Assembly (NCBI GenBank): GCA_002269645.1
Contig: NIVC01000486.1
Span: 1 to 64,000, forward strand
From: Macrostomum lignano
Taxonomy: Eukaryota
DNA length: 64,000 nucleotides
Direction: 5' to 3'
Part shown: positions 13,801 to 64,000 of the stretch, piece by piece
Layout of the letters: every line of letters begins with the position of its first letter
Position numbering within the stretch: position 1 is the first letter of the stretch
Notes under the pieces: generated by a model
The model's database searches: none
The model's input: only the letters and a program-made list of their open reading frames with translations
What the model was told of the DNA's origin: nothing
Position numbers and translations under genes: made by a program

Positions 13801-15408
13801 CACCGGTCGACTCTTGCAAAACTTTGGAATGAAGTTTTCTTTCAACAGTATTCTGGCCTTTAACCCTTTGATAGTGCCAAGGCTTTCAGCAAACACTTGA
13901 TCATACTTCTTCATTAACCGCTCGATAGGTGGAACCAACGTTGTTGTTTTCACATGGGCAAACCTGCTCCAGTCAATTTTCAACGAAGAGAGCCAGTCCC
14001 GACCTAGAAGATTCACTCTGTCTCCCTTCACAACAAGCGCAGTTAGTTGATACTGTCTTTCCTGATAGTTAGTTACGGTAACAGTAGCTTCGCCCAGAAC
14101 TGGTATGAGATGATCTGTGTAACTTGACAGTCTAACATTAGATTTAGACCACCTTAAGCCAAGTTTCTTGCCAGTATTTTCGTTATTAAGGGTCTTGTCT
14201 GCGCCAGTATCCAGTTGGAAATTTACAAAATGCCCATTTATATTTAACTCGCACATATACGGTGCTGATCCACTAAAGCCAGCCATACCTGTAGCAAACA
14301 CAGTCCTGATCTCGGAATGCTTGTCTCGACCACTGCAGTCCGAACCCTCACTTTCTGACTCACTGTCGAAATTCCATGCGTAATGCACCTTACCGGACTT
14401 CCCACGTTTTGAAGAGTTGAATCGCTTTGACCTGCCACTTCCAGACTCTTTTGCCTTGTCCTTTGTACGGCATGCATCTTTAAGATGTCCTACTCGGCCG
14501 CATTTGCTGCACGTTTTATTCCTATTTGGACAGCTCCTTGCCCAATGATCCTTCGCGTTACAGCGGAAACATCCATCTTGGGCGCGGCTCCTTTTCCCAT
14601 GTTGCGCTGCAGTTGATTGCTTGTTAGTTTCCTTCGAGAAATTGACACTATGACCGACTCCTGTGGCGGAGGTGATAGTCACGACTCCTCGCTCTGCTGC
14701 TTCCATCGCAGTCGCTAGCGTTAGTGCACCCGACAGGGTCAGTGTCTCTTCTTGTAGCAATCGCTGCTGGACGAGCCTGTTCCTGAGGCCAACGACGAAC
14801 CTGTCTCTCAGTGCCTCCTCCAGGAACTTGTCAAAACCACACGTGGCTGCCAACCTCCGCAGACTAGCAAAAAAGTCACTCACTGTTTCTCCTTCGTGTT
14901 GGACTCTGCTGTGGAAGTTGTACCGCTCGACGACAAGCTTCGGCTTTGGGTTGAAGTGTTCCCTCAGCGTCTTCACTTGTTCGTCGTACGCCACATCCTT
15001 TGGCTTCTTAGGCGATAGCAGGTTGCGTAGCAATTGATAACAGTCATTACCAATCACTGTAATCAGATTTGCTCGCTTATGTGCCTCCTCGGTCACTTTG
15101 TTTACGACGAAAACTGCTCGAATCGTTCTTCATAAGCTTCCCATTGCTCCGGTTTAGCCACGTCGAACTCTCCGATTTTTACACTCGTCGCCATTGTTAT
15201 GTCTTCTTCTCCGACGTGGAGCTGCTACATTTAAGTAAGAAGACAATGATTCGCTTAAGCGGTTCGAGCTATCGTTTTGCTCCGGTTGATACAAACTCCT
15301 CTTGGGATTCATCTTGTAACTACTTTATTATAAAATAATAGGTTGTGCCCTAGACAACAAACATTGGGCTGGGGGCATACTCTGTGTCTTCTCTGCTAAT
15401 ATACAACA
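10866..15408 (-). mobile_element. Full-length Ty3/Gypsy LTR retrotransposon (Mag-like, single gag-pol ORF)
   Basis: The LTRs at 10866-11080 and 15195-15408 (TG...CA) are identical except for one A in a homopolymer. The TSD is 5 bp, TCAGG (10861-10865 and 15409-15413). A PBS-like TGGCGACGAG follows the 5' LTR and a PPT aaaagggggaa (11081-11091) precedes the 3' LTR. Confidence 0.97.
11126..15194 (-). CDS. Gag-Pol polyprotein (Gag, 2 CCHC knuckles, protease, RT, RNase H, integrase)
   Basis: ATG at 15194 gives MATSVKIGEFDVAKPEQWEAYEERFEQF and joins ORF 11347-15096 with +1 T at 15110-15113. Motifs: CFRCNAKDHWARSC, QLDTGA, YIDD, LQTDASKYGIG, HDGHPG..CEGC, and the DDE core. The C-terminal LSYRLLVNGQVWKRHVDQI is in ORF 11126-11500 after another 1-nt shift near 11465. 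Confidence 0.93.
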
Positions 15409-15820: not shown

Positions 15821-18800
15821 ATGCCCCAGTACTTCAACAAGCCGGAGAATGCGCTCAAGCGTGCCCAGGAATTCCTGGAAGTGGACAAGAAAGAATCGGC
15901 TCTGGACATCTTAGCCGAGGTGATGAAGTCCAAGCGGCATAGGCAGTGGAACAAAGTACACGAGGACATCATGCTGATGTTCCTGGATCTCTGCGTCGAG
16001 CTGCGTCGCAACCAGATATTCAAGGAGGTCATCCACCAGTACAAGAACATGACGCTGAACGTGAGCCCCAGCTCGCTGATTGACATTGTTCGCAAATACC
16101 TGGAACAGGCCGATCGTAAGACCGAGGAGGCTCGCCAAAAATCCAAAGACGCCGTGTCAGCCGAACAAGACGAAGTTGACGATCTGGACGTGATTGAGAC
16201 GCCCGAGAGCCTGATGATGTCGGCAGTGAGCGGTGAGACTACTCAGGACCGCTCAGATCGGGCCATTCTGGTCCCCTGGCTCAAGTTCATGTGGGAGAGC
16301 TACAGGCAGTGCCTGGACCTGTTGCGCAACAATAACAAGCTAGAACGGTTGTACCACGACGTGGCCCAGATGGCCTTCCGATTCTGCGAGAAATACGGCA
16401 GGAAAACTGAATTCCGCAAGCTGAACGACATCCTGCGCAGTCATCTGCTCAAGTTCCAGGCTCAGCTGGCCTCCGGACAGCCGGTGCCACCTACAGGTGT
16501 GAATCTGAACAACCCGGACACTCAGGGCTACCATCTGGAGACCCGGCTGTCCCAGCTGGAGTTCTCTATGAACCTAGAGCTGTACAACGAGGCCTACAAG
16601 TCTATTGAGGACATCTGGAATCTGGTCACGCTGTCTAAGAAATCTCCGAAGCCTAGCATTATGGCAAACTACTACACCAAGGTTGCTCTGGTGTTCTGGA
16701 AGTGCGGCAGTCACCTGTTTCATGCGGCCGCCCTGCACAAGCTGTTTAATTTGCACCGGGAGCACAAGAAAAATATGGCTAGCGATGAGCTGCAGGTAAG
16801 ACTGAGGGAGGGTCTTTAGGATGAATCAAAGTGTGATTTTGCTGAGGCTAGTAGGATTTTGATTAGACAAGTGAAAAATAAATCAGCAAAGACTAGATTT
16901 TGATGTGATAGATGAGTTTTAAATGAAACATGTGAGAGTTCAAAGACATATAGGATATTTTAATGAGACATGTGAGATTTAAATGAGACATGTGACCTTT
17001 CAATGAGACGTAAGACCTCAATGAGACGTGTGAGATATCAATAAGACGTGTAAGATCTCAATGAGACGTGTAAGATCTCAATGAGACGTGTAAGATCTCA
17101 ATGAGACGTGTAAGATCTCAATGAGACGTGTAAGATCTCAATGAGATGTGTAAGATCTCAAGGAGACGTGTAAGATCTCAATGAGACGTGTAAGATCTCA
17201 ATGAGATGTGTAAGATCTCAATGAGACGTGTTAGATTTCAGTGAGACGTGTAAGATTGCCATGAGACTGTGAGACTTTAATAAGACGTGTAAGATCTCAA
17301 TGAGACCTGTAGGATCTCAATAAGACTTGTAAAATCTCAATGAGACTTGTAAAATATCAATGAGACATGTGAGATTTCAATGAGACGTGTAAGATCTCAA
17401 TGAGACATGTGAGATCTCAATGAGACATGTGAGATGTCAATGAGACGTGAGATGTCAATGAGCAATGTAAGATCTCAATAAGACATGTAAGATCTCAATG
17501 AGACATGTAAGATCTCAATGAGACATGTGAGATGTCAAAGAGCTTACCTGAATTAGCTCAGACAGGCAGCTAACACAGCATACCCCCGAAAACCGCAGAC
17601 CATGGCCAGCACTGTGCTGTGCGCCACCCTGGCCATCCCGCTGCCATTCGTCCGCGATCGCCACGCCGACTCGCTGCTTGAATCCGGCGAGATCGCCAGC
17701 AGCGCCAAGCAGAAGATGCTGTGCAGCCTCCTCGGCATGCCCATCCCGCCCAGCCGCCGCTCACTCTGCGCCGATCTGGTCCGTGGCGGCATCGTTGAGC
17801 TGGCCCACCCGGAGCTGGCCTCGCTGCACGCTCAGCTGGAGCAGCGGTTCCAGCCTTTGAAACTGGCCGACCGCTGCGCCCCCGGTCTGCAGAACATCCG
17901 CTCCAATGACCGGCTGGCCCATTACGCCCGGCCAATTGAAGACATGCTGATCTGCCGCACCCTGATCCAGACTGCACAGGTGTACGCCAGCATCACCCTG
18001 CCGCGGTTTGCCACCCTGTTCCCGTTCTGCGACCGGCTCCGCCTGGAGACCACAGTGGTTGAGGCTGCCCGCAATCTGGAGATTCCAGTTCGGATTGATC
18101 ACAGGCGCGGTAGTCTGCTGTTTGGCGGCTTCTCCCAGCTGGGCATTTCACAGCGCGAGGAGGGCGTGCTTAGCGACGGGCCAAGCGTGAAAACTGCCGA
18201 CCAGCTTAGTAAACAGCTGGTGCTGCTGGGAAGCGCTCTGCAGGTACGGTGGAGATTGGATGGGGTTTTGTGCAGTTGGGTGTACACCTGACAGCTCCAG
18301 ATGTGCAGATAGAGCGCTAACCGCACCCAGATCTGCTTAACTTTAGGACGCTTTATAGAGGGGGTCGGCAAACTTATATTTAGCCACAGATACTAAAATA
18401 ACTAGATTGGCCACTCAAGCATATACTTAGTAAAACTGCTTTTTACTTTCAGTTCAGTAGCAAAGAAGAATACATAAGCTATTTTATAAAAAATAAAGGC
18501 AGCTGAAATGACTTTGATAAGTTTAGAAACTCAAGCTTGCATGCAGGCGTAAACAACTTGCTAATTGGTTCAGCAATAATGTACATTAGCCAGTCCACTG
18601 AAATGTACATTGCAGTTTTAGGGAGCGGGTTTGGGGGTAGTGTGGAGAGGCACGGTTGGAGGTTTTTAGCTGGGGGGTGATCATGGGTTAAGAGACAATA
18701 AAGTAGCCTTGTCTTTAAAAATACAAATAAAATGCTTCCGTTTCACTTACTACTGAACTGAAAGTAGCTTACACGCAAATTTGCTGAGTGGCCCATCTAT

Positions 18801-41021: not shown

Positions 41022-44000
41022 CTACGGGTTCATTCGCGCCATCAGTCTGGCGCGCAAGCTTGGCAGGAAGTAAGCAAGGCCAACAGCCAGTGCTCCACTC
41101 CAGCGGCGCCGCCAATAATGGGGGCACTGACCGGGGCAGTGTGAATGACGGCTCCAACAATGATTACCCCAATCATTGGAATCAAAGTGCGACACAAGAT
41201 GTCACGTCTTCTGCCGAGGAACTCCTGCTGAGGCATATTGAATTTCGCTTTACGATGCAGCAAAAGCAGATGTGATGCAAGTCCCACAACGCCAATTAAA
41301 AGCACCGAGCCGCACTCTGCAATTAGGGAACCGGCAACGGTGGTGATCGAAGCTTCCCTCTGCATCAAGGTGTAGACTAATCGTAGGATTCGAACTGCAG
41401 CAGTAGCAATGGTTTGCACCGCGTTGGGCAAAAAGTGGCTAAAACGCCAGGCTAGATTATTCAACTGAGTACTGCTCACCCGGCCATAAATTAAATAGTT
41501 GACAAAGTGTTCGCAGTTGTTAAACAGTAAACTGTAACTCCTACTGCCACACAGTTGATTGAATTTGGCGTCGATCTGGTTCCAGTCTAAATCGGAGTTG
41601 TGCACGACCTTCTGGATTTGATTGTCTGCAACTCGAAGAAATCCTTGAAGCTTGACGACTCCCATGGCTCCAGGACCTTGCGGCAATGCGTACGTGACCC
41701 CAACGCCGGAACAAGTGGCAGCATCCCACTCTGTTAAAATGAAATCAACCTCAGAAACTACTCCGTTGACCATCCGATTTAGAATAATGTGATTGTATTG
41801 CCTGAGACTGCGTCTATCAACTCTGTCTTAGAGTTCAACTTTTCTATTCATTTCCAAAACTTCCAGTGATTTTTCTTTGGTCAGTTTCTTCATTTTGACC
41901 TGAATTTCGGCGAGTTCAGTACCGAACAGGCTTTGAATGCCGCACATCCGACCGGCATCAGGATTATTTCTCAGCCAGAAGCAAAAGTCCCGACTGCAAA
42001 CCTTGCTGCCAAACTTCTTGGCCTTCGCAGTCCATCCCTTCCTGTCGTCGTCGGCATTCAAAAATGTGCAGTCCGTCAGCTCCTCCAGAATAGCAAAACC
42101 AGCGGCTTCTTCAACGCCATTATAGTTGACGCGTCGAATCGAGCTCTCACCCGGGCCAATGACGAGCTTTTCAAATCGCACCCGTTTCTGGTCGTGATTA
42201 TTTTCGTACAACTCGACACGAACAATATCGCTGCAGCCATCTACTGCAGAGCAGCTGCGCATAATTGCTTCGTGCTTGTAAAAGCAAGGTGACTTGTAGA
42301 ACTTTATGTGGCCTCTCTCGAACTCAACAAGGTCTTGCACTGAGTGTACGAGAACTGCGCACTGCTCCCTGTTGCTACTATGCTTGATGCTGCACCAGCG
42401 AGCAAAGTCGCGACTGCTGTTCCACTGGAAGTTGTGCTGCTTCTCTTTGAGTCGGTCGTTGGCTCTTTTAGTCACCTCTTCTGGGGTGAGAACGCAGCCT
42501 TCCAGTACGTTGTACTTAATCGTGTAAATTTTCTGCTTCTTTAAGTCTACTGATAAAGTTTGCCTCTCAATCTGACCTCTCCACGAATCTCTGTAAAAAA
42601 TGAGATCGATTGTAGCGCAGTGGGGATTGTTCGTATCCGGTCGCACCGGGTTGCCGACCACCACTGCGTGCTGGTACAGAGAATACCAATTGTCTCTCCA
42701 AGAAATGACCGAACCAGCTGAAATGCTTTGCATATCATATACTTCTTCAGCTATATGTGCTGGTGACTGGCTACCACCGCCATACAACTGGCAGTTCAAG
42801 CTGGTATCATTGTGTACGCACAGCTTGGCGTCCTTCTCTTCAGCATCAATGATGTACTTTAGTTGTGACACGCACAAATTTTGTTTTTGAGAGCCGTAAT
42901 GGAGCGTTTTAATGCTGAATTGTCCGGATGACCGACCGCTGCCGGTACTGATGCCCGCAACAACCCGATAGACACCATTTATGTGTAAGATGTCGCCAAC
43001 TCTTAGGTCATCACAAGCCACGGGCAACTCACGGTCATGATTGGGAGTAACACTCTCAAACAATACGAGCCGATTGCTTTGCACTTCATTTTGAGTCAGT
43101 GCATCCCAAATGCTGTCTTTCCAATCATCAAATCTTCTATCGCTGTTCGTCACCAGGCGACAAATTTTGAATGAACTTTCACTGTGGTTCAAGGCCAGAT
43201 TTTCTATGAACTCAATGCGTCGGGTTAATTCCGCTTCACTGATGACACGAGACTGATATTGAATGACTCGAGTCACTGGCTTGTCCATTTTGAGCACTAG
43301 TTCACTTGTGTGAACGTAATGCAATTCATTGGGCTTGATTACTTGCAATTCGAGCAAAAGTTTTCGCCCATTATTCAGTTTAGTTACTTTGGTCACTTCT
43401 CCGTGAAGTCTGTTTTTTAGACAGCAGTTAAATTCAAGATGATCACCTTCTTTAATTTCGTGAGTATGAAAGCCATCTAGAAATATGGGCACCGAATTGT
43501 CAGCTCTGTGGCTGATGGACTTGGTCTTACACCACACGACAAACAGAGTGCCACAGTTAGCAATCAGAGAGTATTCCTGCTCGTTGAGGCGGCTTCGAGC
43601 TCTTTCAACCACAACATCGGGCTCGTGGCACCAGAGATCCGAGAAGTGACAGAGAAAGCAGTTCGGATGCACTTGTTTAGTTCCCTGTCTGTCATATTTG
43701 AAAACAAAGTCCTCTCTGATCACAGTTTTAGCGTCAAGCCACGATTTCAATCCGTAATGAATAGCAGTGACAATGTATTTTTCATTTTCACGCGCCAGTT
43801 TTTCCACGATAACCCTGTGCCACTTGCCAGTGTACCACAGGCGCATGACGTCACCTTTCTTTAGCTGTTGAAGCAACTGGAGGGTTACCGGTTCCTCTGA
43901 GTAGATGCCTGCGAGATTTACCGGAGATGATTCTTCTAAGTCTAAAGGACAATCAGCTGTGTTGTCATTGTGCACGCACAGTGTTGTTTCCGTCTCTTTC

Positions 44001-44824
44001 TTTCTTATCAGATACTTTAGCGTGCAAGTCTTGCGATTTTCGTGGTCGACTTCACTGTAGTTGACTAATCCAACACTGACTTCATCCGCGTCGCGAACTA
44101 CACGGCAGACTACTCTGTAGGCATCGTCAACAAAAATGATGTCGCCTCTATGAAGATTTTTCACTTTCACCCTCTGGGTCAATGGTCGAATCGGTCTACT
44201 CTGATTCGTCATCTGTGCGGCTTGCTGCCTCCAGTCCTGCCCGTGGCGACTCGCGTCGGTGAGAAGTAGGCAAAACTGCAGAGTCAAAATGCGCCTCGGA
44301 TACGCGAGGCCGCGCATCAAGTCGATCCTGTGGAGAAATTCCTCAGTCTCCACGCACTTCGATACCGATTTCACTACTGGAACGCGCTCTTTCGATTCTT
44401 TCGATTGTCGAAATTTCCGCTCAGAAATGTTCACAAAGGAAATTCGATCCTTCATCAAGTCCTGCGTGGAAACACTCAACGATAGTAAATAAATGTCCTC
44501 GCACATCTCTTGGCTACTTCGTACGACTGCATGAATTGATCCAGAGTCGTGTTTAAGACTCAAATGATCTCCAGCTTTCACTTGGTGGGTTTCAAAATTC
44601 CCAGGCAAATAAATTGGCACGGTACAATGTTTTCTGTGAGATTGGTCCTTGGTCTTGCACCAAAGTACGAAACCTGAATCACCAAACCATTTGATTTTCT
44701 CGTTCAAGCAACTTTGGGCTCTCCTGACGACTTCGTCGAGAGGACTGCAGTACGATTTTGGAAAGTGTCGAAGTTGGCAACTGGGTTTCAGATGTTTTGA
44801 TCTTCTAGAATTTATAATATTCAC
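41022..44824 (-). CDS. Multi-repeat LRAT/NlpC-P60-like (permuted papain fold) protein with C-terminal transmembrane segments; interrupted by one in-frame TAA at 41828-41830
   Basis: Repeated LRAT-like motifs: GDH/GDV/GDI strands, VVERARSRLNEQEYSLIANCGTLFVVWCKT, EEVTKRANDRLKEKQHNFQWNSSRDFARWC, and a final SYSLLFNNCEHFVNY. ORF 41042-41773 is in the same frame as 41828-44824. Adding 1 nt at 41095 gives a hydrophobic end GVGALAVGLAYFLPSL..MNP* (stop 41022-41024). The 5' end is unresolved. Confidence 0.75.
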
Positions 44825-49364: not shown

Positions 49365-50203
49365 TCGGTGCCATGTCGAAGCAAAATTAATTGTTATTTC
49401 TAGTAGATATGTTTCATTGCATATCAGTTGAGATTATTGATAGTAACAGAATTTTTCCGGGCCAATGCAACTCTGGGAAAATCTTGCTAACAAGTGTTTC
49501 TGTCATTGGAGTAGATTTTACATTTCAAATTCATTCAAATTCAATGAAATTTGCTGTTGCTTGAGAACTGAAATATATTTTTTCTGATGCATTTTTGGAG
49601 AAATAAGACTTTCTAATGTTTTCTCACAATACTATTTTTGTGATATGTCATGTTTGCTTTAGCTAAGTTAAAACAGTTTAATTTATCTCCTGAGCAAAGA
49701 GCTTTTGACGTTCATCTAGATAAAGTGTGTGCTTGACTCAAAAGTAGCGTTCCAAGCTGTTCTTGTCTTATCCACTGATGCTGATTACTGGCCTCAGTGA
49801 CCCAATGCCATTGGATTTTTTCCCTTGTTTTAATCCCACAGAGAAATTGCATGCGCAATCACATTAGGTAATACAATATAACGCCTACCTTCGTAACTTT
49901 AATTCCGAGAGATGGGGTGAAATAAAAGTCAGAAGATAAGAGGGGAGAAGAGGGGAGAGGAGAAGGGAGAGAGGGGAGAAGGGAGAGAAGAGGGAAGAGA
50001 GAAGGGAGAGGAAAGAGAAGAGGGGAGAGGGGAGACGGGGAGAGAAAAGAGAAGAGGGGAGAGGGCAGAGAGGAGAGGGGAGAGGGAGAGAGAGTGAGGA
50101 GGCGAGAGAAAGAGTTGAAGAGATATGGACATTGAGCGGGCCGGATTGCAATTGTGAAGTTTCAAAGGACCCGAGCTTCAGCCCACTAGACAACGAGAAT
50201 ATA

Positions 50204-50206
<3 letters not shown>

Positions 50207-50281
<75 letters not shown>

Positions 50282-50335
50282 AGGAGAGAGAGAGAGAGAG
50301 AGAGGGGAGAGAGAGAGAGAGAAAGAGAGAGAGAT
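50207..50335. repeat. (GA)n microsatellite within a purine-rich tract (49925-50335)
   Basis: Seen directly. Confidence 0.95.
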
Positions 50336-51898
50336 AATTGTCTAAACACACGAACTGCCACTCCCAGACCGCATGTTTGGGAACAATATATCTGAAGGCA
50401 TAGCGGCACAAGTTATCAATTCAAAACGTAAACAAAACCACGGAGCTGATGCAGGAAAAATTGAAGCAAAGTATGTTCAAAGCAAAGAGTACCGAGCTAA
50501 CAGTTATTTCGGGTAAAAATCTTTAGCAACTTCTAAATGCCTCAACGATGTCCACGTTTTCTAAAGTCAGCACAGGTGTACGGTTTAGGATCTCCGGATG
50601 AAGAGACCTGCCCAGTGCCCATGCCCCGGAGATCCCACAAAGGTTACGGTAGTCTTCGTAGTCTCCGTAGGAGATCTTAAACCCTTTAAAGTCTCCGGTC
50701 GGAGATCCCAGTTCGTTTGCAGTCTCCGGATCGGCGACCCAAAACTGGCCGGAGCCCCAGAGATCCTAAACCGTAATACCGGCTGGTTCGGGTCGACGTC
50801 CGGCTCCAAGAACAGTGCAAAGGCTATTTAAAATCTGAAGACGGTCGCTCCGGAATAATTACCGCAAAATTTCATCACAAACAACAAAGAACCAAGACCC
50901 ATAAAGATGTGATTCAAGAGTTAAGGGCCAAATGTACTTTGATAAACTGCTGCATCTCGGCTGAATTCTTCAACCGTCAGATTCACTGCTTAGCAGCATT
51001 TTGCCAAGCAATACTACTACTGATCAAGAGGCAACTTCAGCATTGGTAGTGGTGGCAGTGCAGGTCTCAGGAGCTTTTGGAAGCAGCCACAGAAACTTCT
51101 GGGCAATTAGCATCACATTAACTTAACGAAAGCAGGCAAAATGTTTTGAGCTGCTATATTTCTTAATTTGAAGTCTATTCGAAACCAGGTTAAACTATAA
51201 ATTTATTCCTTTAGCAGCCTTCTTTTGAGTGATTCTTTTCGGGAACCTTTGATAGTCCGGGGTGCTGTACATTTTCATACAACGCCGGTGACAGCGGTGT
51301 AGGGTACACGAGTGATCCGATACTAAACTATACTTATGCGGTAGTAGTCAGTGTATAAGCACCAACGAGTGTCGCAACACCTCTGGTAGCAACGCGAATT
51401 CTGAGCTTCATCACGCCAGAACGAGCTCACTGTGCACACAGTGAAAATACTGAAAAATATTAGTAAAATACGTCTCAGCTCATTGTAGGAAAAAGTACCA
51501 ATGCTACAATTCGTAGCTCGTATTAGCGAAAGCGTAAAACAATGAAAACCGTTGACACAAGAGGCAATAAATAGCAGTAGCATTTTATAATAAAATCAGA
51601 ATAGGTGAAAATATTGTTATTTTGTTTCTGAATGTCTGAATGTTAGCCTGATCATGCTCTAACAGATGGCAAGGTAAAGTAATTATTCATAATTATGATC
51701 TCACTTAGTGGAAAAACTAGAAGGTAACATTATACACTCGTACTGCTTTGTAACACAACTACAATTATAATGAAATCATCCTTAATCCGCGCTGTCGATC
51801 ACTTGAAACCCGCTACGCTCCGACTCTGCAACCTCCACCGAGTCGCTGAGCTCTCTCGGAATTAAGCTGGCTCCCGGGTAGCTCTGGATGAGAGGCAA

Positions 51899-54800
51899 TT
51901 AATCTCTGAACAGTTGAAGCAAGCTGGCGGCAAAGTCGGCGCTCAGATCCATCGACGAACTCTCGTCTTCGAAACCAGTGACGTCATCCCATTCGACCAC
52001 CCTGAAACGGTTGCCTCCCTCCTCGGCGAACTTGGTCAGAGCGTCGCGGAACTCGGCCAGATGAGCTCGCACATCGCCAGTCCTGATGCCGCCGACTCTG
52101 CATTCTGCCTGCTTCCGGATGCCGAGTACACAGGTGGGAATTTCGAACGCGATTCTCCTCGATCGCCAGTCGTGCACTCGGAACGAGTAGCGCCTGCCGC
52201 TGGCCGCTCGGAACTCGTGCACACTCGACTGAGCTCCGAGCTCCGCGAGCTGGCTCCGCAACTTGGACTCGTCCGGGTAGCGACCGCTCTTCGGGATCAC
52301 GAACGTGTACGGCAGGTCGAACGGGATTGGCTCTGCAGAGCTGGACAGCTGCTGCATGTCTGAAATGAGCACAGATGCTCAGTTAGACCAGCAGCTATCA
52401 CCTAGCTAATAGCAGACGTCATATCCGTCTTAAATAAGTCGCTACTTACAATCACTGAGGGGCTGCGCGAATCCGATCCACGTGTTTGCCGCCATCGCGA
52501 ACGCCATCGACATCAGGGGAAGCTCGTCTCTGACCGACTCTGCGCTTGACTGCTGAGCAGCTCTCGATACGAAACTCCACCCGTCTATTAATAGGAAATC
52601 CTCAACTGCAGCAAGCATTTGCCACCTCAAAGAGTCACCGTCCTCCGCGATGTCGATCACCTGAAGCACGCTTGGCTCCGACTCTGCTACCTCCTCCGAG
52701 CTGGTGTCGCTAAGCTCTCTCAGAATCGAGTTCGCTCTCGGGTGGCTCTGGATGAAGCGCAACTCGTCTCTAAACTGCTGGAACATTGCCGTCTTGTCCT
52801 GATCGGCCATCCTGAGCTTCTGCATGACGAACATGGGTGCAGCGTAGCCGCAGAAGACCACTGCGTGCGAGTAGGTCGACTGGTCCTTCGTGAGCGGCTT
52901 CTCCAGCTGCAGCAGGTACGCCGTTACTCGCTTCTTGTAGCCGGGACTGTCGAACTCGAGACACAACTCAGTCGATGCGGTGCTCACCTTGCTGCATCCA
53001 GGAAACAGCATCTGTGGACACACACAGGATACCGGCTGGTTCTGGCTGCTCACGGCGCGCTCGTCCAGCAGCAGGAAGTACTTGGGAACGACTAGGATAT
53101 TGCTGGGGTTGACATCGGTGAGTCCGAAGTTTGTGAGCACTTGTTCTCGGATGAGGCCTTGAGCATCGAGCAGTGACGAGAAAATCTGGCGTCGCATGTT
53201 GGGCAGCACGTAGCTGAGGAACCCGGCGGCCAGTTGCCATGCGAAGCTCTCGCCTGGGCTGCTAAAGCCGCTGTTTTCTGAAAGGATTTGCAAATGGTGC
53301 GGAGAGAAGCTAATGCTATATCTTTTAAGTTTCATCTATGAAGTGATGCAGTAAGCTTTTCTGGCTATGCAGATCAGCGGCGAAGTAATTGTCCATTTGA
53401 GTTGGAATTATAGTGGTGATAAATTCTTCTTTTAATGACCACCTGGGTTCCAAAAGGTACGCAGAATGAATGCACAATCTCGTAAGAAACAAAGTCAATA
53501 TTGTTTCAAAATTACATACTTACCTAGTTCTGTATTGTTTAAGTCTTCCAAGAGTTTTTCAACTCTTTTATTATTTAAATCGTGCAGTTTCAGCACCTTC
53601 ACCATTCGAGTTGGAAGCAGCTGCGACAGGTACAGGTGACTGTCTGTTTTGCTTCTGTAGTTCTTGATTAGGTGGGCCATGCGCTTTCGTAGCCCATGAC
53701 ACTGTAATGTTTGCATGGTATTGACAGCAATAAGTATCCAGCCTTGACCTTGGGCTTACTACATTTGCCCTGTGCTCCAATTGCAAGTGGAGGCAAATGA
53801 TTACTACAGAGTTCAACTGCAACTGAGTTTGCAAATTTGCATTAAACCGTTTGAATTTTTGATTGTAGCCTAAAAGTCTACATTCTTCCTACATAAATCT
53901 GTGTAGGAAGAAATTGCAAAATAATAACTTTTTTACTTAATATGCATGTAACAATTTTGCCATACCAATTTATCAACAATTTTCTTAATCGCAAACTCAA
54001 TCTTTCTTAATTTCCTAGCCCAAATAACTACATTTACTTGTAACTTTGCATCAATTAATCCTTTTTAAATTTTTGGTAACTATAGCGAAGTAACGAGAGG
54101 ATTCAGAAAAAGGTAACAATCGTTACCTTTTTGGTTATTTGTAACGCCCAACACTGCATGCCATCAATAAGTTCCACTCTACCTTGAAAAGCTCCATACC
54201 AAGACGCTTTACACCACCAAGACGCTTTACACCACCAAGACGCTCTACACCACCAAGACGCTTTACACCACCAAGACGCTCTACACCACCAAGACGCTTT
54301 ACACCACCAAGACGCTCTACACCACCAAGACGCTTTACACTACCAAGACGCTTTACACCACCAAGACGCTTTACACCACCAAGACGCTCTACACCACCAA
54401 GACGCTCTACACCACCAAGACGCTTTACACCACCAAGACGCTTTACACCACCAAGACGCTCTACACCACCAAGACGCTCTACACCACCAAGACGCTCTAC
54501 ACCACCAAGACGCTTTACACCACCAAGACGCTTTACACCACCAAGACGCTCTACACCACCAAGACGCTCTACACCACCAAGACGCTTTACACTACCAAGA
54601 CGCTCTACACCACCAAGACGCTCTACACCACCAAGACGCTCTACACCACCAAGACGCTTTACACCACCAAGACGCTCTACACCACCAAGACGCTCTACAC
54701 CACCAAGACGCTTTACACCACCAAGACGCTTTACACTACCAAGACGCTTTACACCACCAAGACGCTTTACACTACCAAGACGCTTTACACCACCAAGACG

Positions 54801-56087
54801 CTTTACACTACCAAGACGCTTTACACTACCAAGACGCTTTACACCACCAAGACGCTCTACACCACCAAGACGCTCTACACCACCAAGACGCTCTACACCA
54901 CCAAGACGCTCTACACCACCAAGACGCTCTACACCACCAAGACGCTCTACACCACCAAGACGCTTACACTACCAATAAGATTCGCAATACCAATAAGATA
55001 ATGATGGTTCGCTCTTATCAATAATGTCCCCTTAATTGTTTTAAATAGTTGCTTCGAGCAGAAAAAAGCTAATAAGTCCTCGCGGGAGTGTCTCTAAATC
55101 TTGGTGAGATTCAGAAAATGATCAGCAACACCGAATAAGAACTTGTAAATCCTTACCCTCTCCACTGTTTGTCTAAGAAGTTTGGTCAGATGTGTCGCAG
55201 ATTCCGGTTGAAACGCAGTAAAAGTATTCAATACTAGTAGAACTTGATGACTTTCATCAATGCTGCTGTACACAGAATTCCCAGAGTTGCAAGGCTGCTC
55301 TACCAGATTTAAACAGCCTCTCAGGAGATCAACGACATTGTCATAGAGTCGGTCCTCCCCGTCACTGGAACCAACCACGATGATTGTGACGAATCTGTTT
55401 GTGTCTGAAAAGATTTAGTCGCACTCTTACTACATCAGAATTCGGTTGTATTGAGTTTTAACCGAAATTTAGCACCATCTATACATGTTTTTAACAAAGA
55501 TGCGATAGAGCCACGTACCTTGATTGAAGAATTGATGGCTGCACATGTATAGTCGATCAGCATGGGATTTATGGAAGTCCATTCTACACTTTGAAACAGA
55601 TTTCGACAGCTTAGGAAGCGAAAGTTCTCAGTAAGTTTTAAGCTAGCTAGAAAACAGATCTGCTGTTTCGTTACTGGGTCCGACAACATTGCCTAATGAG
55701 AAAAAATAGAACGAGAAAAACCGAGGCAAAACCGTGGACTTGCTGTGGGAGTTCCTTCATAAAAAAGGACATTTGTGCAAGTGTAGGCGCATAAAGTGTA
55801 CACAATTAAACAGTCTCATTTTCGCAAGCGGATACACGTAGCTCGTACAACTGCAGATAGATATGTTGATAGAGCTTCATAACGGGTTAATTTCTACCTC
55901 CATAATCCTGTTGACTACATGCACGATGACCAAAAAAATCTAGCCCTAATTTATTGTCACTATTGATAAACAGCATAACTCTTCTATTTTGGCTCACGGT
56001 AGCTCTTGTCTTTCTGGCACACAACCGCAAAGCTGAGGCTATTTCTTTATTTCTCTCGGCAGATGCGACCAGGAGGGCCGCAGACAT
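51899..56087 (-). CDS. Putative TIR-STING-STING protein (copy 1), 6 exons, ~659 aa
   Basis: Model: 56087-55998, 55692-55519, 55404-55157 (needs +1 A at ~55400 or an alternative donor), 53701-53524, 53277-52450 and 52359-51899. TIR-like segments: FVTIIVVGSS..SSIDESHQVLLVL..HLTKLL..LSQLLPTRMVKVL. STING-like domain 1: GESFAWQLAAGFLSYVLPNMRRQI, PKYFLLL, GYKKRV, CGYAAPM, QQFRDELRFI. STING-like domain 2: MAFAMAANTWIGF, PYTFVIP, GRRYS, FEIPTC, AEFRDAL, RFRVVEW. Aligned by eye to human STING (HGLAWSYYIGYL, RLYILLP, GIKDRVYS, LEYATP, KLFCRTL, CRLIAY). Confidence 0.72.
54195..54975. repeat. 18-bp minisatellite (acaccaccaagacgct[c/t]t) in the intron between TIR exons; duplicated at 63640-64000
   Basis: Tandem units; the same unit occurs at both sites, 9444 bp apart. 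Confidence 0.97.
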
Positions 56088-58733: not shown

Positions 58734-60191
58734 TTAATTTGACAAATTACTTCGTCCATTTAATAACAGTTCAAACAAACAGGCGGTAAAGTCGGCGCTC
58801 GGATCCATCGACGAACTCTCGTCTTCGAAACCCGTGACGTCATCCCACTCGACCACCTTGAAACGGTTGCCTCCCTCCTCGGCGAACTTGACCAGAGCGT
58901 CGCGGAACTCGGCCAGATGAGCTCGTACATCGCCAGTCCTGATGCCACCGAATCTGCACTCTGCCTGCTTCCGGATGCCAAGTACGCAGGTGGGAATTTC
59001 GAACGCGATTCTCCTCGATCGCCAGTCGTGCACTCGGAACGAGTAGCGCCTGCCGCTTGCCGCTCGGAACTCGTGCACACTCGACTGAGCTCCGAGCTCC
59101 GCGAGCCGGCTTAGAAACTTGGACTCATCCGGGTAGCAACCGCTCTTCGGGATCACGAACGTGTACGGCGGGTCGAAAGGGATTGGCTCTGCAGAGCTGG
59201 ACAGCTGCTGCATGTCTGAAATGAGTAGAGATGCTCAGTTAGACCAGCAACTATGACCTTGCTAATAGCATTGACGTGACATCAGTTTTGAAATAAGTCA
59301 CTACTTACAATCACTGAGGGGCTGCGCGAATCCGATCCACGTGTTTGCCGCCATCGCGAACGCCATCGACATCAGGGGAAGCTCGTCTCTGACCGACTCT
59401 GCGCTTGACTGCTGAGCAGCTCTCGATACGAAACTCCACCCGTCCATCAACAGAAAGTCCTCAACTGCAGCAAGCATCTGTGACCGTAAAGAGTCACCGT
59501 CCTCCTCGATGTCGATCACATGAAGCGCGCTCGGCTCCGACTCTGTTACCTCCTCCGAGCTGGTGTCACTAAGCTCTCTCAGAATCGAGTTCGCTCTCGG
59601 ATGGCTCTGGATGAAGCGCAACTCGTCTCTAAACTGCTGGAACATTGCCGTCTTGTCCTGATGGGCCATCCTGAGCTTTTGCATGACGAACATGGGTGCA
59701 GCATAGCCGCAGAAGACCACTGCGTGTGAGTAGGTCGACTGGTCCTTCGTGAGCGGTCTCTCCAGCTGCAGCAGGTACGCCGTTACTCGTTTCTTGTAGC
59801 CGGGACTGTCGAACTCGAGACACAGCTCAGTCGATGCGGTGCTCACCTTGCTGCATCCAGGAAACAGCATCTGCGGACACACACAGGATACCGGCTGGTG
59901 CTGGCTGCTCACGGCGCACCTGTCCAGCAGCAAGAAGTACTTGGGAACGACTAGGGTCTTGCTGGGGTTGACATCGGTGAGTCCGAAGTTTGCGAGCACT
60001 TGTTCTCGGATGAGGTCTTGAGCATCGAGCAGTGACGAGCAGATCTGGCGTCGCATGTTAGGCAGCACGTAGCTGAGGAACCCGGCGGCCAGTTGCCATG
60101 CGAAGCTCTCGCCTGGGCAACTGTTTCGTTGTTGAACCAGATTGTCGTTGATCTTTTTGATTGATGTACATGTATCATTACCGGTTTTCAT
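58734..60191 (-). CDS. STING-STING paralogue (copy 2), apparently lacking the TIR exons
   Basis: Exons are 60191 (in-frame ATG; an acceptor near 60113-60121 is also possible) to 59309, and 59215-58734. It is highly similar to copy 1 from PGESFAWQ onward. The sequence at 60120-61330 shows no match to the TIR exon. Confidence 0.7.
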
Positions 60192-61333: not shown

Positions 61334-63145
61334 CTAATCTGTTGCTGTCAACAAGCCAAGAAGAGATCTTGCTGACTCGATTTTGTTCGGTTCGGTCACA
61401 AAGCATTCATCGAAACCCGTGACGTCATCCCATTCGACCACCTTGAAACAGTTGCCTCCCTCCTCGGCGAACTTGACCAGAGCGTCGCGGAACTCGGCCA
61501 GATGAGCTCGTACATCGCCAGTCCTGATGCCACCGAATCTGCACTCTGCCTGCTTCCGGATGCCAAGTACGCAGGTGGGAATTTCGAACGCGATTCTCCT
61601 CGATCGCCAGTCGTGCACTCGGAACGAGTAGCGCCTGCCGCTTGCCGCTCGGAACTCGTGCACACTCGACTGAGCTCCGAGCTCCGCGAGCCGGCTTAGA
61701 AACTTGGACTCATCCGGGTAGCAACCGCTCTTCGGGATCACGAACGTGTACGGCGGGTCGAAAGGGATTGGCTCTGCAGAGCTGGACAGCTGCTGCATGT
61801 CTGAAATGAGTAGAGATGCTCAGTTAGACCAGCAACTATGACCTTGCTAATAGCATTGACGTGACATCAGTTTTGAAATAAGTCACTACTTACAATCACT
61901 GAGGGGCTGCGCGAATCCGATCCACGTGTTTGCCGCCATCGCGAACGCCATCGACATCAAAGGAAGCTCGTCTCTGACCGACTCTGCGCTTGACTGCTGA
62001 GCAGCTCTCGATACGAAACTCCACCCGTCAATCAACAGAAAGTCCTCAACAGCAGCAAGCATCTGTGACCGTAAAGAGTCACCGTCCTCCGCGATGTCGA
62101 TCACATGAAGCGCGCTCGGCTCCGACTCTGTTACCTCCTCCGAGCTGGTGTCGCTGAGCTCTCTCAGAATCGAGTTCGCTCTCGGGTGGCTCTGGATGAA
62201 GCGCAACTCGTCTCTAAACTGCTGGAACATTGCCGTCTTGTCCTGATCGGCCATCCTGAGCTTCTGCATGACGAACATGGGTGCAGCGTAGCCGCAGAAG
62301 ACCACTGCGTGCGAGTAGGTCGACTGGTCCTTCGTGAGCGGCTTCTCCAGCTGCAGCAGGTACGCCGTTACTCGCTTCTTGTAGCCGGGACTGTCGAACT
62401 CGAGACACAACTCAGTCGATGCGGTGCTCACCTTGCTGCATCCAGGAAACAGCATCTGTGGACACACACAGGATACCGGCTGGTTCTGGCTGCTCACGGC
62501 GCGCTCGTCCAGCAGCAGGAAGTACTTGGGAACGACTAGGATATTGCTGGGGTTGACATCGGTGAGTCCGAAGTTTGTGAGCACTTGTTCTCGGATGAGG
62601 CCTTGAGCATCGAGCAGTGACGAGAAAATCTGGCGTCGCATGTTGGGCAGCACGTAGCTGAGGAACCCGGCGGCCAGTTGCCATGCGAAGCTCTCGCCTG
62701 GGCTGCTAAAGCCGCTGTTTTCTGAAAGGATTTGCAAATGGTGCGGAGAGAAGCTAATGCTATATCTTTTAAGTTTTATCTATGAAGTGATGCAGTAAGC
62801 TTTTCTGGCTATGCAGATCAGCGGCGAAGTAATTGTCCATTTGAGTTGGAATTATAGTGGTGATAAATTCTTCTTTTAATGACCACCTGGGTTCCAAAAG
62901 GTACGCAGAATGAATGCACAATCTCGTAAGAAACAAAGTCAATATTGTTTCAAAATTACATACTTACCTAGTTCTGTATTGTTTAAGTCTTCCAAGAGTT
63001 TTTCAACTCTTTTATTATTTAAATCGTGCAGTTTCAGCACCTTCACCATTCGAGTTGGAAGCAGCTGCGACAGGTACAGGTGACTGTCTGTTTTGCTTCT
63101 GTAGTTCTTGATTAGGTGGGCCATGCGCTTTCGTAGCCCATGACA
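61334..63145 (-). CDS. STING-STING paralogue (copy 3) with the second TIR exon; 5' exons would lie beyond the window
   Basis: Exons are 63145-62968, 62721-61894 and 61800-61334. 61886-64000 matches 52442-54556 at an offset of 9444 bp. The C-terminal tail has diverged (DECFVTEPNKIESARSLLGLLTATD*). Confidence 0.72.
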
Positions 63146-64000
63146 CTGTAATGTTTGCATGGTATTGACAGCAATAAGTATCCAGCCTTGACCTTGGGCT
63201 TACTACATTTGCCCTGTGCTCCAATTGCAAGTGGAGGCAAATGATTACTACAGAGTTCAACTGCAACTGAGTTTGCAAATTTGCATTAAACCGTTTGAAT
63301 TTTTGATTGTAGCCTAAAAGTCTACATTCTTCCTACATAAATCTGTGTAGGAAGAAATTGCAAAATAATAACTTTTTTACTTAATATGCATGTAACAATT
63401 TTGCCATACCAATTTATCAACAATTTTCTTAATCGCAAACTCAATCTTTCTTAATTTCCTAGCCCAAATAACTACATTTACTTGTAACTTTGCATCAATT
63501 AATCCTTTTTAAATTTTTGGTAACTATAGCGAAGTAACGAGAGGATTCAGAAAAAGGTAACAATCGTTACCTTTTTGGTTATTTGTAACGCCCAACACTG
63601 CATGCCATCAATAAGTTCCACTCTACCTTGAAAAGCTCCATACCAAGACGCTTTACACCACCAAGACGCTCTACACCACCAAGACGCTCTACACCACCAA
63701 GACGCTTTACACCACCAAGACGCTCTACACCACCAAGACGCTTTACACCACCAAGACGCTCTACACCACCAAGACGCTTTACACCACCAAGACGCTCTAC
63801 ACCACCAAGACGCTTTACACCACCAAGACGCTCTACACCACCAAGACGCTTTACACCACCAAGACGCTCTACACCACCAAGACGCTTTACACCACCAAGA
63901 CGCTCTACACCACCAAGACGCTTTACACCACCAAGACGCTTTACACCACCAAGACGCTCTACACCACCAAGACGCTTTACACCACCAAGACGCTCTACAC

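What the first reader, a model, noticed from the sequence alone, without database searches (positions are those of the whole stretch)
51899..53260. The two STING halves are asymmetric at the ligand pocket
By-eye alignment to human numbering. Domain 2 keeps R238, Y240, E260 and T263 (GRRYS; FEIPT). Domain 1 keeps R238 and the YA-x-P motif but has T at 240, G at 260 and A at 263 (KKRVT; CGYAAP). Both have F at Y167. A homodimer must present a symmetric pocket, whereas a fused pseudo-heterodimer can evolve an asymmetric one. Inference: this may be tuned to an asymmetric or novel nucleotide signal, or one half may be structural only.
Basis: partly seen in the sequence, partly recalled or inferred. 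Interest (0 to 1): 0.8.

Follow-up and report, generated by a model that had tools for sequence, protein, structure and literature searches.

The report
Asymmetric double STING in a flatworm
A flatworm (Macrostomum lignano) gene encodes a soluble protein with two very diverged STING ligand-binding domains in a row; only the second keeps the residues that read the nucleotide base, so it may be a single-chain, lopsided version of the normally symmetric STING dimer, in an animal group thought to lack STING.

Summary
The window is Macrostomum lignano DNA. The target is an intact 5-exon, 580-aa gene on the minus strand, one of three tandem paralogs.

Standard sequence tools do not see STING here: Pfam, PDB phmmer and PDB hmmsearch gave nothing.
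- **Half 2:** an AlphaFold model built from family sequences only matches STING ligand-binding domains in Foldseek (E about 1e-5, top 50 hits all STING).
- **Half 1:** it aligns to a STING profile by hhalign (E 3e-5 to 1e-3), and folds confidently as STING when STING homologs are added to the alignment.

| | Y167 | R238 | Y240 | E260 | T263 | other |
|---|---|---|---|---|---|---|
| Half 2 | F | R | Y | E | T | |
| Half 1 | F | R | none | G | A | keeps Y-A-x-P |

One correction: half 1 has a 3-residue deletion at 240-242, not a T.

G260 in half 1 and E260/R238 in half 2 are invariant across paralogs only 34-42% identical. Both halves are under purifying selection (dN/dS 0.1-0.24).

The pseudo-heterodimer reading is plausible but untested. 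A chain-forming homotypic pairing is the main rival. Tandem STING proteins are annotated in oysters, so this is a new variant of a known kind.

The parts
55519..55546 (-). Exon 1 (ATG at 55546; MCSHQFFNQ, phase-1 donor GTACG)
   Evidence: tblastn with the P0003 N-terminus. The joined 5-exon CDS is 1743 nt with an intact 580-aa ORF.
55157..55404 (-). Exon 2: first part of an N-terminal alpha/beta-looking domain of unknown type (VTIIVVGSSDGEDRLYDNVV...)
   Evidence: No Pfam family at E<=10 for the 96%-identical paralog P0003. A TIR-like nature is a by-eye impression only.
53524..53701 (-). Exon 3: rest of the N-terminal region (CHGLRKRMAHLIKNY...NNTEL)
   Evidence: 95% identical to P0003 residues 88-151.
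52450..53277 (-). Exon 4: STING-like half 1, the linker, and helix alpha1 of half 2
   Evidence: Acceptor cctttcag|AA, donor GATT|gtaagt.
52360..52449 (-). Intron (90 nt, GT-AG, phase 1) that splits half 2 after its alpha1 helix
   Evidence: The same intron is present in the other two copies.
51899..52359 (-). Exon 5: rest of STING-like half 2, with stop TAA at 51901-51899
52592..53254 (-). Half 1, a STING ligand-binding-domain homolog (protein residues 160-380, GESFAW...AAVEDFL)
   Evidence: - hhalign versus STING profiles: E 3.2e-5 at 72.7% probability, and E 1.3e-3.
- Paralog P0006 helix alpha1 hits Pfam STING_LBD at E 0.0014, below the gathering threshold.
- AlphaFold with a merged alignment gives pLDDT 80 and pTM 0.82.
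- Foldseek top 50 hits are all STING, E 1e-6.
53201..53227 (-). Half 1 alpha1 motif AGFLSYVLP (G166-F167-L168...L172-P173 equivalents)
52916..52951 (-). Half 1 lid segment DSPGYKKRVTAY: S at R232, R at R238, positions 240-242 deleted
52829..52855 (-). Half 1 FCGYAAPMF: G at E260, Y261, A262, A at T263, P264
51983..52525 (-). Half 2, a STING ligand-binding-domain homolog (protein residues 403-553, ELPLMS...VVEWDD; spans the intron)
   Evidence: - AlphaFold with a family-only alignment gives pLDDT 65-88 over this half.
- Foldseek versus PDB: top 50 hits all STING, best E 9.8e-6, TM 0.62-0.68.
- Colinear hhalign alignment, E about 0.01.
- Three MAFFT modes agree.
52172..52219 (-). Half 2 lid segment HEFRAASGRRYSFRVH: R238, Y240 and S241 equivalents; the R of EFR is a possible R232 equivalent
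52124..52153 (-). Half 2 IAFEIPTCVL: E260 and T263 equivalents, with P at 262 and C at 264
58758..60164 (-). Paralog copy 2 (the two-exon tandem STING region), intact, with identical pocket residues
61337..62722 (-). Paralog copy 3 (the two-exon tandem STING region), intact, with identical pocket residues; its exon 3 equivalent lies at 62969-63157

Best explanation
The locus encodes a soluble 580-aa Macrostomum lignano protein with no transmembrane helix. It has an N-terminal domain of unknown type followed by two highly diverged STING ligand-binding domains joined by a linker of about 20 residues.

The most likely mechanism is as follows.
1. The two halves fold back on each other through their alpha1 helices, as the two protomers of every known STING dimer do. 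This forms one composite cyclic-dinucleotide pocket.
2. Both halves supply the stacking aromatic (F at Y167) and an arginine (R238).
3. Only half 2 supplies the base- and ribose-reading residues (Y240, E260, T263).
4. Half 1 has a more open side (G260, A263, 240-242 deleted).
5. The pocket is therefore intrinsically asymmetric. It would suit a mixed-base or mixed-linkage dinucleotide made by one of the M. lignano cGAS-like receptors.
6. Ligand-induced closure would then drive oligomerisation and output through the N-terminal domain.

Shown: the gene structure, the STING fold of half 2, the STING homology of half 1, the residue map and its conservation, and purifying selection on both halves.

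Inferred: intramolecular pairing, ligand binding, ligand identity and the output.
For: **Organism and gene.**
- The closest proteins are M. lignano hypothetical proteins at 90-98% identity.
- The 5-exon ORF is intact.
- There are three intact tandem copies.

**STING nature.**
- Half 2: AlphaFold with a family-only alignment, then Foldseek with the top 50 hits all STING.
- Half 1: hhalign E 3.2e-5, a Pfam STING_LBD partial hit in paralog P0006, and a confident STING-like model with a merged alignment.
- In that model AlphaFold placed strand beta5 at LQVID, not where MAFFT had aligned it, so the model is not a simple copy of the alignment.

**Residue map.** It is consistent across hhalign (two profiles) and MAFFT.

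**Asymmetry is conserved.** G260 in half 1, and E260 and R238 in half 2, are invariant in paralogs at 34-42% identity.

**Selection.** dN/dS is 0.10-0.24 in both halves.

**Co-occurrence of the halves.** Every full-length family member found in an exhaustive search of 1.84 billion representatives carries both halves in the same order.

**Solubility.** No 19-residue window exceeds a mean Kyte-Doolittle hydropathy of 1.29.

**Upstream enzymes.** Li et al. 2023 cloned five M. lignano cGLRs (PMC9980059, supplement 3, rows 89-93).

**Established knowledge.** STING binds one cyclic dinucleotide per dimer at the alpha1 interface. In human STING bound to 2'3'-cGAMP, Y167 stacks on the bases, R232 and R238 bind the phosphates, and E260 and T263 contact guanine.
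Against: - There is no direct evidence that half 1 packs against half 2. The tandem model had pTM 0.44, and half 1 was at pLDDT below 50 with the family-only alignment.
- The halves show no detectable similarity to each other and only 22/153 identities through the STING-anchored alignment.
- In paralogs P0005 and P0006 a domain of 155-170 aa sits between the halves. Close intramolecular pairing is therefore not forced by a short linker across the family.
- R232 is absent in half 1 and uncertain in half 2. S162 is replaced in both.
- Sequence-level support for half 2 being STING is weak: hhalign probability about 4%, E about 0.01.
- The half 1 structural model used STING homologs in its alignment, so it is partly circular.
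- The Foldseek output gives no query range. Assigning the first hit set to half 2 is an inference from the confidence profile and from alignments of up to 283 columns to full-length STING.
Confidence: 0.5

Rival explanations
1. Homotypic pairing between molecules. Each half dimerises with the same half of another chain (half1:half1' and half2:half2').
- This would give two kinds of symmetric pocket: a canonical-like one from half 2 and a degenerate one from half 1.
- It would also give an intrinsic ability to form chains or filaments, as ligand-bound TIR-STING does.
For: - All solved STING domains are homodimers; the Foldseek hits are chains of such dimers, including the bacterial TIR-STING filament 9lmr.
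- A large domain separates the halves in P0005 and P0006.
- P0006 looks like a duplicated (domain-STING) unit.
- Each half conserves its own alpha1 sequence.
Against: - No family member with a single half was found. This is expected if the two halves need each other.
- A symmetric half-1 pocket with G260, A263 and no Y240 would have almost no base-reading residues, yet half 1 is under purifying selection.
- The window subfamily has shortened the linker to about 20 residues, which favours intramolecular contact.
Confidence: 0.25
2. The STING fold has been repurposed. The protein no longer binds a cyclic dinucleotide. The retained residues in half 2 are structural or bind something else, and the asymmetry has no signalling meaning.
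For: - Pfam and PDB sequence searches fail.
- R232 and S162 are not retained.
- Most flatworms lack cGLRs and STING (PMC9980059; PMC13563047).
- The output domain is unidentified.
Against: - Half 2 is globally the more diverged half (9/41 conserved columns) but keeps exactly R238, Y240, E260 and T263, plus F at 167.
- M. lignano does have cGLR genes.
- The gene is part of a tandemly expanded family with gene conversion, typical of immune genes.
Confidence: 0.17
3. Neutral decay. One half (half 1) is a degenerating remnant of a duplication, or the gene copies are pseudogenes.
For: - Half 1 lacks most polar pocket residues.
- R238 is lost in half 1 of P0006.
Against: - All three copies have intact reading frames and splice sites.
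- Half 1 has dN/dS of 0.11-0.24, the same as half 2.
- Half 1 keeps more STING scaffold positions (17/41) than half 2.
- Its motifs are invariant across paralogs at 34-43% identity.
Confidence: 0.05

Closest known systems
[quoted passage not shown]
   Same: - Soluble, with no transmembrane helices.
- STING ligand-binding domain(s) sit C-terminal to another globular domain.
- A class with two STING domains per chain is annotated in oyster (PMC11103948).
- The oyster TIR-STING structure 6wt7 is the second-best Foldseek hit for half 1, and 8ydn is among the top hits for both models.
- Both animals are spiralians.
   Different: - No TIR domain is detectable here (Pfam at E<=10; PDB phmmer).
- The flatworm halves are far more diverged: Pfam STING_LBD does not reach threshold, whereas the oyster domains are annotated by standard tools.
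- The window subfamily has no domain between the two STING halves.
- I found no published analysis of pocket asymmetry in the oyster tandem proteins, and could not retrieve their sequences to compare.
Canonical metazoan transmembrane STING (human TMEM173; Nematostella and coral STINGs)
   Same: - Same ligand-binding-domain fold and order of secondary-structure elements.
- Half 1 keeps the A-W...G-[FY]-L...L-P helix motif and Y-A-x-P.
- Half 2 keeps R238, Y240, E260 and T263.
   Different: - No four-helix transmembrane domain and no recognisable C-terminal tail.
- Two ligand-binding domains per chain instead of one.
- 13-20% identity to the human protein.
- F replaces Y167 in both halves. R232 is not retained in half 1.
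- The pocket cannot be two-fold symmetric if the halves pair with each other.
Bacterial TIR-STING (e.g. Sphingobacterium faecium) of CBASS
   Same: - Soluble STING fused to an N-terminal effector-type domain.
- Activation by ligand-driven filament formation is a plausible analogue for output.
- 9lmr appears among the Foldseek hits.
   Different: - Bacterial STINGs are compact homodimers that bind symmetric c-di-GMP.
- Here there are two non-identical ligand-binding domains, in a eukaryotic gene with introns, and no detectable TIR.

Membership tests
STING ligand-binding domain (Pfam PF15009 STING_LBD) | Sequence match to the family HMM above the gathering score (27 bits) | tested here: not met
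   The window protein gave no hit at E<=1. Paralog P0006 scored 18.5 bits, E 0.0014, over profile positions 3-28 only. Other paralogs gave none.
STING ligand-binding domain | STING LBD fold (long alpha1, five-stranded sheet, alpha3, long alpha helix, beta5, alpha4) | tested here: met
   - Half 2: a family-only AlphaFold model (pLDDT 65-88) with Foldseek top 50 hits all STING, E about 1e-5, TM 0.62-0.68.
- Half 1: pLDDT 80 and pTM 0.82, Foldseek E about 1e-6. Its alignment contained STING homologs, so this part is partly circular.
STING ligand-binding domain | Profile-profile homology to canonical STINGs | tested here: inconclusive
   - Half 1: hhalign probability 72.7% with E 3.2e-5, falling to 18% with E 1.3e-3 against a broader profile.
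- Half 2: probability about 4%, E about 0.01, but colinear over 107-143 columns.
STING ligand-binding domain | Cyclic-dinucleotide contact residues (Y167, R232, R238, Y240, E260, T263 in human numbering) | tested here: inconclusive
   - Half 2: F167, R238, Y240, E260, T263; R232 uncertain.
- Half 1: F167 and R238 only; S232, G260, A263, 240-242 deleted.
STING ligand-binding domain | Dimer that binds one cyclic dinucleotide at the alpha1 interface | not testable with these tools
   No multimer prediction, model coordinates or ligand docking were available. The tandem model had pTM 0.44.
Metazoan transmembrane STING | Four N-terminal transmembrane helices | tested here: not met
   The highest 19-residue mean Kyte-Doolittle hydropathy in the 580-aa protein is 1.29, and it lies inside the alpha1 helix of half 2.
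TIR-STING (bacterial and oyster) | TIR domain fused N-terminal to STING | tested here: not met
   - No TIR family at E<=10 in Pfam for five family members.
- No PDB sequence match for the P0006 N-terminal or inserted domains.
Tandem (two-STING-domain) proteins as annotated in oyster | Two STING domains in one polypeptide | tested here: met
   for the flatworm protein. The oyster class is known only from the description in PMC11103948.

The most novel reading that the evidence does not exclude
A single-chain STING: the two halves form an obligate intramolecular pseudo-heterodimer. Its built-in asymmetry (base-reading residues only on the half-2 side) makes it a dedicated receptor for an asymmetric nucleotide signal from Macrostomum cGLRs. 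This would be a cryptic cGLR-STING pathway in a phylum where STING is considered lost, and a natural example of breaking the two-fold symmetry of the STING pocket.
Probability: 0.35. Interest if true: 0.8.

Novelty: new variant of a known kind. Interest (0 to 1): 0.62.

Why it matters
Flatworms are described as lacking STING, and mostly lacking cGLRs. Yet five M. lignano cGLRs have been cloned with no known receptor (PMC9980059; PMC13563047). This family is invisible to Pfam and to an exhaustive HMMER scan, and it is the obvious candidate receptor.

All characterised STINGs are symmetric homodimers that must accommodate asymmetric ligands such as 2'3'-cGAMP in a symmetric pocket. A fused, diverged pair would show how evolution resolves that mismatch. 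It would also make ligand-specificity questions directly testable, because each half can be mutated separately, which is not possible in a homodimer.

The case also shows that very diverged immune receptors can be recovered by structure prediction where profile searches fail.

Tried and rejected
- **Pfam on the 448-aa two-exon product:** only a sub-threshold ERG2 hit, no STING.
- **PDB sequence searches:** phmmer and a family-profile hmmsearch at E<=10 found nothing.
- **Internal duplication:** BLASTP and hhalign between the halves show no similarity, so a recent duplication is rejected.
- **Exhaustive HMMER of 1.84 billion representatives with the family profile:** only 4 clusters. The three with names from the sources are M. 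lignano; P0006 and P0007 carry no organism label. No canonical STING was reached, and no deeper alignment was possible.
- **Rejected submission:** I used the 98%-identical P0002 instead.
- **Tandem AlphaFold model with a 5-sequence alignment:** half 1 unresolved, and nothing on inter-domain packing.
- **Broadening the STING profile with cnidarian sequences:** this lowered rather than raised hhalign probabilities.
- **N-terminal and inserted domains:**
  - No Pfam or PDB match.
  - Only weak internal relationships: P5 insert to P6 insert at E 4e-8, and P6 N2 to P4 N-terminus at E 1e-4.
  - The 'TIR-like' label is therefore not adopted.
- **Literature searches for flatworm STING or for analysis of tandem STING pockets:** nothing beyond the oyster annotation.
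Full report
**What is at the coordinates.** The window is eukaryotic DNA with microsatellites, introns and a retrotransposon.

- On the minus strand, two ORFs (52442-53335 and 51899-52372) are joined by a 90-nt GT-AG phase-1 intron: donor GATT|gtaagt after 52450, acceptor tttcag| before 52359.
- The product is 90-98% identical to four hypothetical proteins of the flatworm Macrostomum lignano.
- With the P0003 gene model as a guide, three upstream exons were placed. The full 5-exon CDS (55546-55519, 55404-55157, 53701-53524, 53277-52450, 52359-51899) is an intact 580-aa ORF.
- Two further intact copies of the two-exon region lie at 58758-60164 and 61337-62722 on the same strand.

**Are these STING domains?** Standard sequence tools say nothing.

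- Pfam gave no STING hit. PDB phmmer and a family-profile hmmsearch at E<=10 gave none.
- An exhaustive HMMER scan of 1.84 billion representative proteins found only four clusters: P0003, P0005, P0006 and the fragment P0007. The three proteins named by the sources are M. lignano; P0006 and P0007 carry no organism label.
- The two halves have no detectable similarity to each other (BLASTP, hhalign).
- The first hint came from paralog P0006. Its half-1 helix (GLAWQYATGFLAYILP) hits Pfam STING_LBD at E 0.0014 and 18.5 bits, below the 27-bit cut-off.

**Half 2.**

- An AlphaFold model of the tandem region used only five family sequences. It gave pLDDT 65-88 for residues 257-400 of the query (half 2) and below 50 for half 1.
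- Foldseek against the PDB returned STING ligand-binding domains as all top 50 hits: human, Nematostella, oyster and a bacterial TIR-STING. The best E was 9.8e-6, probability 1.00, TM 0.62-0.68 normalised to the target.
- The tool gives no query range. I assign the match to half 2 for two reasons. It is the only confident part of the model. Alignments of up to 283 columns to full-length human STING also require more than 100 residues N-terminal to the matched domain.
- The order of secondary-structure elements in half 2 is that of a STING LBD: long helix, strand, helix, three strands, short helix, long helix, strand, helix.

**Half 1.**

- hhalign against a 15-sequence, mostly vertebrate STING alignment gave 72.7% probability and E 3.2e-5 over 134 columns.
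- Against a broader 12-representative profile including cnidarians it gave 18% and E 1.3e-3.
- With 19 canonical STING LBDs added to the alignment, AlphaFold modelled half 1 at pLDDT 80.4 and pTM 0.82. Foldseek again returned only STINGs: 5cfo_A at E 1.2e-6, with oyster TIR-STING 6wt7 second.
- This is partly circular. However, the model placed strand beta5 at LQVID, not at the position MAFFT had aligned, so the sequence itself fits the fold.

**Residue map.** My human STING 139-341 sequence was verified against PDB chains. hhalign and MAFFT (for half 1; three modes for half 2) all give the same equivalences.

| Human position | Half 1 | Half 2 |
|---|---|---|
| W161 | W | A |
| S162 | Q | N |
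| G166 | G | G |
| Y167 | F | F |
| R232 | S | uncertain (the R of EFR aligns to it in one hhalign run) |
| R238 | R | R |
| 240-242 | deleted | Y240, S241 |
| E260 | G | E |
| Y261 | Y | I |
| A262 | A | P |
| T263 | A | T |
| P264 | P | C |

**Is the asymmetry meaningful?** I took 41 columns that are at least 90% conserved in 12 canonical STINGs.

- Half 1 keeps 17, mostly scaffold positions: A-W, G, L, L-P, P203, C206, G234, A262, P264, F291, L295, I298.
- Half 2 keeps 9, but these include R238, E260 and T263. It also keeps Y240.
- The pattern is complementary, not a case of one good and one decayed copy.
- Across paralog lineages at 34-42% identity, G260 in half 1 and E260, R238 and F167 in half 2 are invariant. 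R238 of half 1 becomes T in P0006. Y240 of half 2 becomes F in P0005. T263 of half 2 becomes A or P.
- Among the three window copies, dN/dS is 0.11-0.24 for half 1 and 0.10-0.24 for half 2. Both halves are maintained.
- The copies are mosaic: copy 1 resembles copy 3 in half 1, and copy 2 resembles copy 3 in half 2. This indicates gene conversion.

**Architecture and context.**

- No 19-residue window exceeds a mean hydropathy of 1.29, so no transmembrane helix is predicted.
- The N-terminal 150 residues have no Pfam or PDB match.
- P0005 and P0006 carry a homologous 155-170-aa domain between the halves (E 4e-8). P0006 has two more N-terminal domains. The family therefore looks like a duplicated (domain-STING) unit, and the window subfamily has lost the middle domain.
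- An oyster class with two STING and two TIR domains is annotated in the literature (PMC11103948). I found no study of its pocket.
- Li et al. 2023 state that most platyhelminths lack cGLRs, and they list cestodes with 0 cGLR and 0 STING (PMC9980059). They nevertheless cloned five M. lignano cGLRs (supplement 3, rows 89-93).
- The planarian Schmidtea lacks detectable cGAS and STING (PMC13563047).

**Mechanism.** From established knowledge of STING, one cyclic dinucleotide binds per dimer at the alpha1 interface. Y167 stacks on each base, R232 and R238 bind the phosphates, and E260 and T263 contact guanine.

- The most economical reading is that the two halves pair within one chain and build a single pocket that reads one base specifically (half 2 side) and is open on the other side (half 1). 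I put this at about 0.5.
- The main rival is homotypic pairing between chains, which would give filaments (0.25).
- A repurposed, non-binding fold is next (0.17).
- Neutral decay is disfavoured by the selection and conservation data (0.05).
- None of these can be separated without multimer modelling or biochemistry.

**Verdict.** This is a new variant of a known kind: a tandem, soluble, extremely diverged STING in a flatworm. Interest is moderate to high.

Noticed in passing
window 51908-53278, 58758-60164, 61337-62722 (all minus strand): Three tandem paralogs of the double-STING gene. Synonymous divergence is mosaic: copies 1 and 3 are closest in half 1 (dS 0.07), and copies 2 and 3 are closest in half 2 (dS 0.03). 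This suggests gene conversion or recombination between copies. The C-terminal tails come in two forms (…SSMD[LP]SADF… versus …DECFVTEPNKIES…).
   Followed up: partly
window 51779-51928 (minus strand, overlapping the stop codon and running downstream of it): A fragment about 54-58% identical at the protein level to the half-1 segment ANSILRELSDTSSEEV…VIDIAED (tblastn). It looks like a relic of an exon-4-like sequence in the 3' flank.
   Followed up: no
window 54198-54975: An 18-bp minisatellite with 43 copies at 96% match (consensus ACCAAGACGCTTTACACC). It lies inside the intron between exons 2 and 3 and creates a spurious 264-aa 'PRRFTPP' ORF on the plus strand.
   Followed up: partly
window 49954-50334: A purine-rich low-complexity tract that includes a (GA)64 microsatellite.
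   Followed up: no
window 11347-15096 (minus strand): A 1249-aa ORF with gag zinc knuckle, aspartyl protease, reverse transcriptase, RNase H and integrase domains. This is an apparently intact Ty3/gypsy-type LTR retrotransposon polyprotein.
   Followed up: no
window 15821-18291 (plus strand): Exons of an eIF3a homolog: the PCI/TPR-like region matches at E 8e-114.
   Followed up: no
window 41042-44824 (minus strand): Two long ORFs (243 and 998 aa), each with a short LRAT (NlpC/P60-type) domain match at E about 1e-7. The rest of the 998-aa ORF has no Pfam match.
   Followed up: no
P0001 residues 1-100 (paralog gene model, not in the window): The UniRef model P0001 begins with a half-2-like C-terminal segment (…ELRVAFDVPPCVLNLPGQAKSGVGGV…) that resembles P0006. 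It is probably a merged model of two adjacent family genes. The UniRef names 'HECT domain-containing' and 'Death domain-containing' given to family members were not reproduced by Pfam.
   Followed up: partly
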